Below, in pieces: positions 12,790-13,832 of a stretch of 64,000 bases of DNA. Under the pieces are notes generated by a model that saw only the letters and a program-made list of their open reading frames with translations, searched no databases and was not told the DNA's origin. The position numbers were made by a program, and so were the translations under genes. The stretch's first letter is position 1. Every line of letters starts with the position of its first letter. This stretch comes from Octopus sinensis (taxonomy: Eukaryota): NCBI RefSeq assembly GCF_006345805.1, contig NC_043004.1, positions 19,344,001 through 19,408,000 on the forward strand, given 5' to 3'.

Positions 12790-13250
12790 TAAGATTGGTG
12801 TAAACCTGTATTTAAATTGCAATTAACGCCTGGGTAATTGATAGAGTAATTTTCATTTTCTATAGTGACAGAAATGCCGAATCTATTGAAGAATTATACT
12901 GACGTTAAGTAGTTCTACGCGTGTATTAGAGGTGTTTTTAATTATACAGACCCCCTGCTCCAAATTCAGCGAATTCCTTAGTGATATTGTCCAATAGGTA
13001 CCTTCCCGCAAGATCAGTTCCCTCCGCTGAGTCTGGAGACCCATAGATATATCAAAGAAAGCAGGTGTGTCCTTCCTAGCTCACAGTTTATTATCAAATT
13101 CGATAATGGACTTACGGGCCGTGAGCATTACGTTGATTTCCTTCTTAATTATCTTAGTAAAGTTCTTAGCAAAAATGAGCGCACTATTTAGAATAGTGGG
13201 GTTTATGGGGGAGTAATAATTGTGAATGTAGGTAAATCATACTGTTAGTA
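12790..13250 (-). mobile_element. Penelope-like element reverse transcriptase fragment
   Basis: Minus strand gives ILNSALIFAKNFT...ARKSIIEFDNKL..RK...FFDISMGSPDSAE..DLAGRYLL...GGLY, matching the PLE RT motifs FDxxMGSxDxAE and GLYRDD. Confidence 0.8.
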
Positions 13251-13832
13251 TGCGCAGGCGTGGCTGTGTGGTAAGAAAGAAGCTTGCTTCCCAACCACAT
13301 AGTTCCGGGTTCACTCCCATTGCGTGGTACCTTGGGCAAGTGTCTTCTACTCGGGCCGAGCAAAGCCTTGCGAGTGGATTTGGTAGACGGAAACTGAAAG
13401 AAGTTTATATATATGTGTGTGTGTATGAATATACTTTATTAAAAGCAGCAGAAATATCACAAAAGCTGTTATTCAGAGTTTCGCGTTCCCATTCGTCGGA
13501 CAGTTTTGTCTGAACGAACAGAACGTGAAACTCTGAGTAACAGTTTTTGTGATATTTCTGTTGCGTTTGATAAAGTATATTCATACACACACACATATAT
13601 ATAAACTTCTTTCAGTTTCCGTCTACCAAATCCACTCGCAAGGCTTTGCTCGGCCCGAGTAGAAGACACTTGCCCAAGGTACCACGCAATGGGAGTGAAC
13701 CCGGAACTATGTGGTTGGGAAGCAAGCTTCTTTCTTACCACACAGCCACGCCTGCGCATACTAACAGTATGATTTACCTACATTCAAAATTATTACTCCC
13801 CCATAAACCCCACTATTCTAAATAGTGCGCTC
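13177..13832. repeat. 656-bp fold-back palindrome (328-bp arms, 4-nt loop) containing two inverted SINE-A left arms
   Basis: 13177-13502 is the reverse complement of 13507-13832; loop gttt at 13503-13506; one mismatch in the outer ~260 bp. Confidence 0.95.

What the first reader, a model, noticed from the sequence alone, without database searches (positions are those of the whole stretch)
13177..13832. 656-bp fold-back palindrome with young outer arms and an old apex
Seen: arms are exact reverse complements around a 4-nt loop. The outer ~260 bp (PLE RT fragment, SINE-A left arm, microsatellite) differ at one base, whereas the inner ~65 bp differ at about ten positions including indels. Inference: an old inverted PLE terminal repeat formed a hairpin that later primed fold-back synthesis or gene conversion, copying the SINE and RT flank. 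A transcript would form ~320 bp of dsRNA, a potential ADAR or endo-siRNA substrate; coleoids are known for extensive A-to-I editing. The diverged apex argues against a simple read fold-back artefact.
Basis: partly seen in the sequence, partly recalled or inferred. Interest (0 to 1): 0.72.

Follow-up and report, generated by a model that had tools for sequence, protein, structure and literature searches.

The report
Old hairpin extended by fold-back copying
A 656-bp DNA palindrome in repeat-rich non-coding animal DNA is real in the sequence and is best read as an old, decayed 130-bp hairpin that recently primed copying of 263 bp of its own left flank, a known repair or replication accident with no evidence of function.

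Summary
Arms 13177-13502 and 13507-13832 pair around the loop GTTT. The outer 263 bp differ at one base. The inner 63 bp differ at 10 substitutions plus 2 one-base indels (Fisher p 1.4e-8; step at 13429-13440).

The arms contain the stub of a decayed retroelement, a SINE-like head, its microsatellite, and a unique apex. [quoted passage not shown] Its homology runs unbroken through the left boundary (13236 to 12669). The right arm stops abruptly in unrelated DNA. The left arm is therefore the template and 13570-13832 is the copy.

No inverted similarity exists beyond the ends, there is no target-site duplication, and no other copy occurs in the window.

Best reading (0.6): fold-back (snap-back) priming at an older imperfect inverted repeat copied the flank, and the new end was rejoined. 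Yeast experiments show this mechanism.

Not supported: that the apex is a PLE terminal repeat. Untested: transcription, ADAR or siRNA roles. An assembly artefact (about 0.15) cannot be excluded without reads, and no orthologous locus could be reached.

This is an ordinary kind of event, though a clear example.

The parts
12669..13236 (-). Decayed, 5'-truncated Penelope-like retroelement fragment (RT region, about aa 261-462 of relatives 760-800 aa long). It runs uninterrupted through the palindrome's left boundary at 13177.
   Evidence: tblastn of P0008/P0007/P0014/P0108 gives three frame-shifted segments, 13236-13039, 13042-12944 and 12887-12669. DNA identity to Logan contig L001 is 61% over 13229-12627. 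P0001 is 60% aa identical.
13177..13439 (+). Left outer arm, inferred to be the template of the duplication. It contains the PLE stub (13177-13236), a short linker, the SINE-like head (13253-13402), the microsatellite (TA)n(TG)n (13403-13424) and 15 bp more.
   Evidence: 1 mismatch in 263 bp to the right outer arm. Retroelement homology is continuous across 13177.
13253..13402 (+). SINE-like repeat head. It lacks the family's conserved 3' half after the internal microsatellite.
   Evidence: Ten other copies in the window are 69-85% identical to it. The alignment shows other copies continuing into ...GTCTGTGTTTGTCCCC...CGCTTGACAACCGATG..., which is absent here. About 6% mismatches to the consensus of the other copies.
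13440..13502 (+). Left half of the old apex inverted repeat.
   Evidence: 10 substitutions and 2 indels against the right half; K2P 0.195. Unique in the window.
13503..13506 (.). Loop GTTT at the centre of symmetry.
13507..13569 (+). Right half of the old apex inverted repeat. Its outer end is inferred to be the 3' end that primed fold-back synthesis.
   Evidence: change point 13429-13440 on the left corresponds to 13569-13580 on the right.
13570..13832 (-). Right outer arm, inferred to be the newly synthesised inverted copy. It contains the microsatellite copy (13585-13606), the SINE head copy (13607-13756, 152/152 identical) and a PLE stub copy (about 13773-13832, 3'-truncated).
   Evidence: P0001 aa 32-50 maps to 13782-13838 only.
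13832..13833 (.). Outer junction of the copy with unrelated right-flank DNA. There is no target-site duplication, and continued copying would have given ATTTTTGCT rather than the observed TGGTATTTG.

Best explanation
This is a real genomic inverted duplication made by fold-back (snap-back) priming. An older imperfect inverted repeat, about 63-78 bp per arm and now about 82% complementary with a 4-nt loop, lay just right of a SINE-like head and a decayed Penelope-like RT fragment. Either a break occurred to the right of it, or a nascent strand dissociated while replicating rightwards. In both cases a 3' end was left in the right half-repeat. That end annealed to the left half-repeat on the same strand and primed DNA synthesis back along its own left flank. 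It copied 263 nt: 15 bp of spacer, the microsatellite, the SINE head and 60-74 bp of the PLE fragment. Synthesis stopped at an arbitrary point, and the new end was joined to the DNA now at 13833 onward. The old half-repeats were not resynthesised and so keep their accumulated differences. The new segment is still nearly identical to its template. Shown: the anatomy, the step in divergence, which arm is the template, and the absence of any inverted homology outside. Inferred: the priming event itself, break versus replicative switch, the polymerase, and the joining pathway. No function is implied. If a long transcript crosses the locus it would form a long duplex, but that is a by-product.
For: (1) There is a sharp step from K2P 0.195 to 0.0038 at 13429-13440, p 1.4e-8. 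(2) The identical part runs from that step all the way to the palindrome's edge, and nothing inverted remains beyond it. Outward synthesis from a primer predicts exactly this. (3) Retroelement homology crosses the left edge without a break, at protein and DNA level. The right edge cuts the copied stub after about 60 bp and abuts unrelated DNA. This gives the template and copy polarity. (4) The two SINE heads are 152/152 identical and their microsatellites are the same length, while other family copies are 69-85% identical. The arms are therefore a duplication, not two insertions. (5) The apex differences are ordinary neutral-looking changes: 9 transitions of 10, two of them CpG to TpG. They do not look like sequencing-type errors. 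(6) Rough ages fit a sequence of events. Apex divergence is about 10% per arm, the SINE is about 6% from its consensus, and the outer arms are about 0.2% per arm. (7) The mechanism is demonstrated experimentally. In yeast, an imperfect inverted repeat next to a break folds back, Pol delta extends it, and the other end captures the new DNA by end joining. This gives interstitial inverted insertions of 2 to about 150 bp, and 'longer inverted repeats are formed' (PMC11724301). Inverted repeats down to 75% identity still fold back in single-stranded DNA (PMC10164571). Breaks near natural inverted repeats drive inverted duplications (PMC10622511).
Against: No reads, no second individual and no orthologous or empty site could be examined, so neither the event nor the sequence is independently confirmed. 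At 263 bp the copy is longer than the interstitial fold-back insertions seen in the yeast amplicon assay (up to about 150 bp, most under 14 bp). In one yeast system the mismatches in the priming repeat were corrected during fold-back, whereas here 12 differences survive. That requires a transient hairpin that escaped mismatch repair. Junction microhomology cannot be assessed without the ancestral right flank.
Confidence: 0.6

Rival explanations
1. Assembly or library artefact. The true genome has left flank, apex, then right flank, and the 263-bp inverted copy comes from a fold-back or chimeric long read, or from in-vitro snap-back fill-in at the natural hairpin, that was incorporated into the contig.
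For: Fold-back reads exist at about 0.55-0.6% in ONT genomic libraries and can tangle assemblies (PMC12870357). The window has no Ns and so probably comes from a long-read assembly. A natural hairpin is a plausible site for in-vitro snap-back. No independent data could be reached.
Against: Described artefact reads are near-perfect palindromes folded at the read's midpoint and are not recurrent, and HiFi data have almost none. Here the copy stops after 263 bp and the contig continues for 50 kb of unique sequence. A second chimeric join at 13832/13833 would therefore have to survive consensus building. The one arm difference and the preserved old apex fit a real locus.
Confidence: 0.15
2. This is an older, larger palindrome whose outer arms were recently homogenised by arm-to-arm gene conversion, leaving only the centre unconverted.
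For: Arm-to-arm conversion is well known in large palindromes (established knowledge; primate sex-chromosome palindromes, listed). It would also produce young-looking arms.
Against: The identical tract reaches exactly to the palindrome's end, with no diverged inverted remnant outside. A conversion tract would have to coincide with the end of the old homology. Conversion between partners about 18% diverged is strongly disfavoured (established knowledge). The SINE appears younger (about 6%) than the apex repeat (about 10% per arm), so it was probably never part of an old palindrome (soft evidence). The right-arm PLE stub has no continuation.
Confidence: 0.1
3. The whole 656-bp palindrome formed in one recent fold-back at a tiny central repeat (ACA/TGT). 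The central ~65 bp then diverged fast, through error-prone initial synthesis or repeated centre breakage and repair.
For: On the + strand 7 of 10 mismatched positions are G.T pairs, the commonest misincorporation. The differences are somewhat denser near the tip, and both indels lie within 15 nt of the centre. Centre-directed rearrangement of palindromes is established knowledge.
Against: About 18% differences over 63 nt is far above any replicative or repair polymerase error rate (established knowledge). The G.T excess is not significant (7 vs 2, two-sided p 0.18), nor is the gradient (p 0.17). Centre-break repair gives deletions, not scattered transitions. Two of the changes are CpG to TpG, typical of slow decay.
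Confidence: 0.07
4. It is a mobile fold-back element or MITE, or a composite transposon with long terminal inverted repeats, inserted as a unit. A variant is the inverted 5'-truncated copy that often accompanies PLE insertion.
For: MITE-like fold-back elements occur in this window at 3295-3553 and 15173-15459. PLE insertions often carry an adjacent inverted 5'-truncated copy (PMC8557442).
Against: There is no target-site duplication. No other copy of the apex or of 13177-13250 occurs in the 64 kb, and there are no relatives on record. The left 'terminal repeat' is simply the continuation of a flanking retroelement fragment. The right PLE stub is 3'-truncated (60 bp), the opposite of what target-primed reverse transcription leaves. 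A SINE that arrived later is present in both arms at 100% identity.
Confidence: 0.05

Closest known systems
Local fold-back (templated inverted) insertions at double-strand breaks: Pol delta extension of a hairpin formed at an imperfect inverted repeat, then capture by end joining (yeast; PMC11724301). Related: snap-back synthesis in SD-MMEJ / polymerase-theta end joining (PMC5728401, PMC4912351).
   Same: There is a pre-existing imperfect inverted repeat at the centre. The inserted DNA is the reverse complement of the sequence immediately next to the repeat. The event is interstitial and makes a longer inverted repeat. The copy ends at an arbitrary position joined to unrelated DNA.
   Different: This copy is 263 bp, against 2 to about 150 bp (mostly under 14 bp) in the assay. 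The priming repeat is about 63 bp at 82% identity with a 4-nt loop, rather than 10 bp with a 41-nt loop. This is a fixed natural variant in an animal genome, and its genetics and junction microhomology are unknown.
Fold-back inversions / palindromic duplications initiated by short inverted repeats near a break, via hairpin-capped chromosomes (Tetrahymena rDNA, yeast sae2/mre11 mutants, cancer amplicons; PMC10622511, PMC10164571).
   Same: Intrastrand annealing of an inverted repeat exposed as single-stranded DNA primes synthesis back along the same molecule. Diverged repeats (at least 75% identity) are competent.
   Different: Those events copy to the chromosome end, make dicentrics and trigger breakage-fusion-bridge cycles. 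Here synthesis stopped after 263 nt and the chromosome stayed intact. In the yeast clones the repeat mismatches were corrected, whereas here they persist.
Large sex-chromosome palindromes maintained by arm-to-arm gene conversion.
   Same: The arms are nearly identical around a distinct centre.
   Different: Those have kb-to-Mb arms, a unique spacer, and ongoing conversion under selection. Here the arms are 328 bp, the centre is itself an older inverted repeat, and the anatomy argues against conversion.
Inverted SINE pairs (for example inverted Alu) as dsRNA and ADAR substrates (PMC5625713 for the metazoan-wide link between dsRNA and editing).
   Same: Two inverted copies of a SINE-like head lie 204 bp apart and would pair in a transcript that crosses both.
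   Different: Inverted Alu pairs arise from independent insertions and are 10-20% diverged. Here the pair is a duplication at 100% identity, and no transcription or editing evidence exists.

Membership tests
Fold-back-primed (snap-back) inverted duplication | A pre-existing inverted repeat lies at the centre of the new palindrome and is older than the duplicated arms. | tested here: met
   Inner 63 bp K2P 0.195 vs outer 263 bp 0.0038; change point 13429-13440; p 1.4e-8.
Fold-back-primed (snap-back) inverted duplication | The copy is the reverse complement of the DNA immediately adjoining the repeat. One arm (the template) is continuous with its flank, and the other ends abruptly. | tested here: met
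   PLE homology runs 13236 to 12669 through 13177. The right stub ends at 13832 in unrelated DNA, and there is no inverted similarity outside.
Fold-back-primed (snap-back) inverted duplication | An empty (pre-duplication) allele or ortholog exists, and the junction shows 0 to a few bp of microhomology or filler. | not testable with these tools
   No orthologous or allelic sequence could be retrieved.
Long-read fold-back artefact | The palindrome is symmetric about the read or contig segment, the breakpoint is at an arbitrary site, and other reads do not support it. | tested here: inconclusive
   The context is asymmetric (328-bp arm, then 50 kb of unique sequence) and the centre is a natural diverged hairpin. 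These features do not match the described artefact, but read support cannot be examined.
Penelope-like element (for the fragment at 12669-13236) | A single ORF with a reverse transcriptase followed by a C-terminal GIY-YIG endonuclease (canonical EN+ PLE; PMC8557442). | tested here: met
   Full-length relatives (713-911 aa) have FDxxxFYPSI, FDVTMGS and invariant Y-R-D-D, then a CNC...CP...C linker and ...YKA.V...Y.G.T..FK.R.Y.H at the C-terminus. Pfam gives RVT_1 in 3 of 16 members (best E 1.6e-4) and GIY-YIG in 2 of 16 (best E 2.3e-3, C-terminal), all below gathering score. The nearest PDB sequence is a retron-type RT, E 0.1. The window itself holds only the RT part.
Penelope-like element (for the fragment at 12669-13236) | Pseudo-LTRs, a hammerhead ribozyme, and an adjacent inverted 5'-truncated copy. 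| tested here: not met
   Rfam at E<=1 over 12500-14500 gives no hammerhead. The fragment is 5'-truncated and lacks its 3' end in the window. The inverted stub is 3'-truncated and includes a later SINE, so it is not an insertion-associated copy.
   tblastn with five PLE proteins gives no hit below E = 1 in 13425-13584. The L001 DNA match ends at 13229.
MITE / fold-back transposon | Terminal inverted repeats flanked by a target-site duplication, and multiple copies. | tested here: not met
   No TSD. The apex and 13177-13250 are single-copy in the window. Genome-wide copy number is not testable.
microRNA / structured RNA gene | A match to a curated family at gathering score, or conservation with covariation. 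| tested here: not met
   All Rfam matches are generic long-hairpin hits far below gathering score, for example MIR841 at 97 vs 200 bits. No homologous sequences are available for covariation.

The most novel reading that the evidence does not exclude
The locus is a palindrome that grows by accretion. A hairpin-prone centre breaks or stalls replication repeatedly, and each time it re-primes on itself, so layers of different age record successive fold-back events. On this reading the apex is the fossil of a first snap-back, possibly at the 5' end of a reverse-transcribed fragment. Each apex arm read outward encodes ...ETLSNSFCDISVAFDKV..., which resembles RT motif A, and the centre is a 3-bp ACA/TGT stem with a 4-nt loop. 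A weaker variant is that the apex is kept as a + strand RNA hairpin: 7 of 10 mismatched positions are G.U wobbles on that strand, and the fold is -105.5 kcal/mol against -84.3 on the other strand.
Probability: 0.2. Interest if true: 0.5.

Novelty: new member of a known kind. Interest (0 to 1): 0.3.

Why it matters
If the sequence is real, it is a clean natural example of how a short, decayed inverted repeat can seed a much longer perfect palindrome in an animal germ line. So far this process has been characterised mainly in yeast reporters and cancer genomes. The template and the copy are both identifiable, and the age contrast is preserved in the sequence. Such events create new fragile sites and new long-duplex-forming sequence from ordinary repeats. 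In a genome crowded with SINE-like elements they could add to the pool of dsRNA-forming loci. On its own this is one non-coding locus with no functional evidence. Its main practical value is as a test case for checking long-read assemblies at hairpins, and as a search pattern (old centre, young arms, one arm continuous with its flank) for a genome-wide survey.

Tried and rejected
- Six-frame Pfam scan of the left flank found nothing. The RT identity came only through a Logan homologue and a full HMMER scan of representatives.
- Rfam scan gave only sub-threshold generic hairpin matches to plant and animal miRNA families. ARAGORN found no tRNA.
- Exact-product look-ups of four ORFs were not on record: apex; right junction; left SINE into the left half of the apex; right SINE into the right half of the apex.
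- Homology searches with the apex ORF and with the SINE+apex ORF found no candidates.
- An exact degenerate 34-mer from the apex in the metagenome contigs gave 0 hits.
- The RT motif-A resemblance of the apex has no database support. The pattern D[ILFVM][SKREQT]xAF[DN]x[VIL] occurs only at the two arms in the window and in none of 100 shuffles. But it was defined post hoc, and neither Pfam nor the PDB sequences support it. It is kept as a lead only.
- PLE insertion-associated inverted copy: rejected (see rivals).
- Pol III read-through from the SINE heads as a source of long dsRNA: unlikely, because of T-runs at 13504-13507 and 13544-13548 (+ strand) and at 13441-13444 and 13461-13464 (- strand). 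This is inference.
- Strand bias of the apex mismatches (7 G.T vs 2 A.C) is not significant, p 0.18.
- A literature search for the SRA runs behind L001/L002, to name the organism, found nothing.

Full report
**1. Observation**

The inverted repeat is present at the stated coordinates. The repeat finder gives arms 13177-13488 and 13521-13832 at 98% complementarity. A gapped alignment of the left arm against the reverse complement of the right arm carries the pairing on to 13502/13507 around the loop GTTT at 13503-13506.

The differences are very unevenly placed:
- Outer 263 bp (13177-13439 vs 13570-13832): one mismatch, 13222 G opposite 13787 A.
- Inner 63 bp: nine transitions, one transversion and two single-base indels.
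- Kimura distances: 0.195 inner, 0.0038 outer.
- Contrast: Fisher p = 1.4e-8, best change point 13440, support interval 13429-13440.

Pairing stops dead at 13177/13832. In-register identity outside is 24-30%, and local alignment of the left flank with the reverse complement of the right flank scores no better than shuffled sequence over 100, 200 or 400 bp. As single-stranded DNA the 656 nt fold into one hairpin of -395.5 kcal/mol, z = -57.

**2. What the arms are made of**

Local BLAST of the separate parts against the window gave these results:
- 13251-13402 is one copy of a SINE-like family with ten other copies in the window, only 69-85% identical to it.
- The two copies inside the palindrome are 152/152 identical.
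- The apex (13425-13584) and the outermost 74 bp (13177-13250) occur nowhere else in the window.

Aligning the family with flanks shows that other copies continue past the internal (TA)n(TG)n microsatellite into a conserved 3' half. This copy runs from the microsatellite straight into the apex. That this is the abundant octopus SINE is my own recollection and was not tested. ARAGORN and Rfam do not call a tRNA here.

**3. The "PLE RT fragment"**

Pfam finds nothing in six frames of 12300-13260. The minus-strand frame crossing 13177 does hit one protein from two Logan contigs, P0001, at 60% identity. Contig L001 aligns at the DNA level, 61% identity, from 13229 leftward to 12627.

A full HMMER scan with P0001 finds 976 relatives. 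The long ones (713-911 aa) share this architecture:
- an RT core with FDxxxFYPSI, FDVTMGS and an invariant Y-R-D-D;
- a Cys-rich CNC...CP...C linker;
- a C-terminal ...YKA.V...Y.G.T..FK.R.Y.H region.

Pfam support is sub-threshold but consistent. RVT_1 is found in 3 of 16 members (best E 1.6e-4) and GIY-YIG in 2 of 16 at the C-terminus (best E 2.3e-3). The nearest solved sequence is a retron-type RT at E = 0.1. An RT followed by a C-terminal GIY-YIG domain defines canonical EN+ Penelope-like elements, and an extra CX2-5CxxC motif in the linker marks the Neptune and Nematis clades (PMC8557442).

tblastn places the fragment at 13236-13039, 13042-12944 and 12887-12669 on the minus strand, in three frames. 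It corresponds to about aa 261-462, so it is an old, 5'-truncated, decayed copy.

**4. Which arm is the original**

The retroelement homology passes through the left boundary without interruption, at both protein and DNA level. In the right arm only the stub up to 13832 is present (P0001 aa 32-50 maps to 13782-13838), and what follows is unrelated. The left arm is therefore native sequence, and the outer part of the right arm is an inverted copy of it. The boundary at 13177 falls at an unremarkable point inside the RT fragment.

**5. What the apex is**

This remains unknown. The apex has no similarity to the PLE proteins or to L001. It has no relatives among 5.8 billion proteins when its spanning ORF is used, and there is no exact match in the metagenome contigs. 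Calling it a PLE terminal repeat is not supported.

I noticed that each arm, read outward from the centre, translates to ...ERETLSNSFCDISVAFDKVYS (the left arm has AAFNKV). This resembles the D-x-S-K-A-F-D-x-V motif A of non-LTR reverse transcriptases, from my own knowledge. A pattern written for it occurs only at these two places in the window and never in 100 shuffles. However, the pattern was written after seeing the sequence, and neither Pfam nor the PDB sequences support it. It is a lead and nothing more.

On the + strand seven of the ten mismatched positions are G.T (G.U) pairs, so the + strand RNA hairpin is more stable, at -105.5 against -84.3 kcal/mol. Seven against two is not significant (p = 0.18). 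Two of the changes are CpG to TpG. Together with the 9:1 transition bias, this looks like slow neutral decay rather than sequencing error.

**6. Mechanism**

The pattern has four elements:
- an old imperfect inverted repeat at the centre;
- a near-identical inverted copy of the adjoining flank that starts at the edge of that repeat and runs outward to an arbitrary end;
- one arm continuous with its flank;
- nothing inverted beyond the ends.

This is what fold-back priming predicts. A 3' end lying in the right half-repeat, after a break to its right or after a nascent strand came off its template, anneals to the left half-repeat on the same strand and is extended along its own flank. The new end is then rejoined.

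This mechanism has been shown experimentally:
- In yeast, a 10-bp imperfect inverted repeat next to an HO break folds back, Pol delta (Pol32-dependent) extends it, and the other end captures the product by end joining. The result is interstitial inverted insertions of 2 to about 150 bp, and 'longer inverted repeats are formed' (PMC11724301).
- Inverted repeats down to 75% identity still fold back once single-stranded (PMC10164571). The apex is about 82% identical.
- Breaks near natural inverted repeats drive inverted duplications (PMC10622511).

There are differences from those systems. The copy here is 263 bp. The twelve differences in the priming repeat were not corrected, whereas in the sae2 mutant clones they were, so the hairpin must have been transient.

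Rough relative ages fit an ordered history: apex repeat about 10% per arm, SINE about 6% from its consensus (9 mismatches in 146 columns plus indels), outer arms about 0.2% per arm. These numbers are small and the consensus rests on nine copies.

**7. Rivals**

*Gene conversion in an older, larger palindrome.* This would need a tract that ends exactly where the old homology ended, since nothing is left outside. It would also need recombination between partners about 18% diverged, and a SINE that looks younger than the apex to have been present in both arms.

*A single recent fold-back followed by fast divergence of the centre.* This needs an implausible error or mutation rate, and the suggestive G.T bias and centre-ward gradient are not significant.

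*A mobile fold-back element.* There is no target-site duplication and no other copies in the window, and the left arm is plainly the continuation of a flanking retroelement.

*The inverted 5'-truncated copies that accompany PLE insertion*. These do not fit. The right stub is 3'-truncated, and both arms include a SINE at 100% identity.

*An assembly artefact.* This cannot be excluded. Fold-back reads make up about 0.55-0.6% of ONT genomic reads. But those reads are symmetric about their midpoint, are not recurrent, and HiFi data have almost none. Here the copy ends after 263 bp and the contig runs on for 50 kb, so a second false join would be needed. I put this rival at about 0.15.

**8. Function**

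There is no evidence for any function. Rfam matches are generic hairpin hits far below the gathering scores. T-runs at 13504-13507 and 13544-13548 on the + strand, and at 13441-13444 and 13461-13464 on the - strand, would be expected to stop Pol III transcripts that start in either SINE head before they could form the long duplex. This is an inference from the established T-run terminator rule. A 320-bp dsRNA would need a Pol II transcript crossing the locus. A link between dsRNA abundance and A-to-I editing across animals is documented (PMC5625713, listed), but nothing ties it to this locus.

**9. What could not be done**

No reads, alleles or orthologues could be reached. Four exact ORF look-ups, three homology searches and one collection scan returned either nothing or only a paralogous retroelement. 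The organism was not identified by any tool. L001 shares a second repeat with the window, which suggests that the Logan runs come from a related genome.

**10. Verdict**

The apex's PLE identity is not supported, and the RNA roles are untested. This is a new instance of a known kind of rearrangement. It is of modest interest and is mainly useful as a clear natural example and as a locus to check against raw reads.

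Noticed in passing
window 3295-3553: A self-inverted element of about 260 bp with about 79% complementary long arms (GGGTACTACTATTCGTAGATACCACACGCTAAAGAGGGACCAATGCGGTCAAAACTACTAAAATAAAC...) around an AT-rich centre, lying in TA-rich DNA. It looks like a MITE-type fold-back element.
   Followed up: partly
window 15173-15972: Nested inverted repeats. 15173-15269 vs 15367-15459 are 88% identical with arms about 98 bp apart, looking like a 290-bp MITE. 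15191-15367 vs 15796-15972 are 94% identical with arms 430 bp apart, a second inverted partial copy. The structure lies 2 kb right of the target and is probably a transposon family rather than a fold-back duplication.
   Followed up: partly
window 14247-14306: A head-to-head microsatellite palindrome, (TG)n-GCGC-(CA)n, with 30-nt arms 87% complementary and no spacer, 415 bp right of the target. It gives sub-threshold mir-297/mir-466-type Rfam hits. It could be a small fold-back footprint inside a microsatellite, or chance.
   Followed up: no
window 23952-24721 (minus strand): Weak protein-level matches to the C-terminal (linker/GIY-YIG) part of the same Penelope-like family (P0008 aa 668-787, E 0.015-0.46), next to another SINE copy at 24205-24357. 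This is possibly a second decayed PLE fragment.
   Followed up: no
window 52000-55500: A GC-rich block (GC 0.50, GC skew -0.67) of (CCA)/(CAC)-type minisatellite with an interspersed unit ...CACTAACTACAACAAACACATCAGCATCATCATC..., followed by its complement-rich (TGG/TGA) stretch at about 54.3-55.5 kb. It is a large imperfect inverted arrangement of simple repeats.
   Followed up: no
window 8985-9220, 38665-38891, 40221-40641, 51791-52061, 63770-63968: A second interspersed repeat family of about 200-270 bp, 88-91% identical between copies, on both strands. A 30-bp piece of it also ends Logan contig L001, which suggests that the contig comes from a related genome.
   Followed up: no
window 13425-13584: Each apex arm, read outward from the centre, translates to ...ERETLSNSFCDISVAFDKVYS. 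This resembles reverse-transcriptase motif A. The pattern is unique to these two sites in the window and absent from 100 shuffles, but it was defined post hoc and Pfam and the PDB sequences do not support it.
   Followed up: partly
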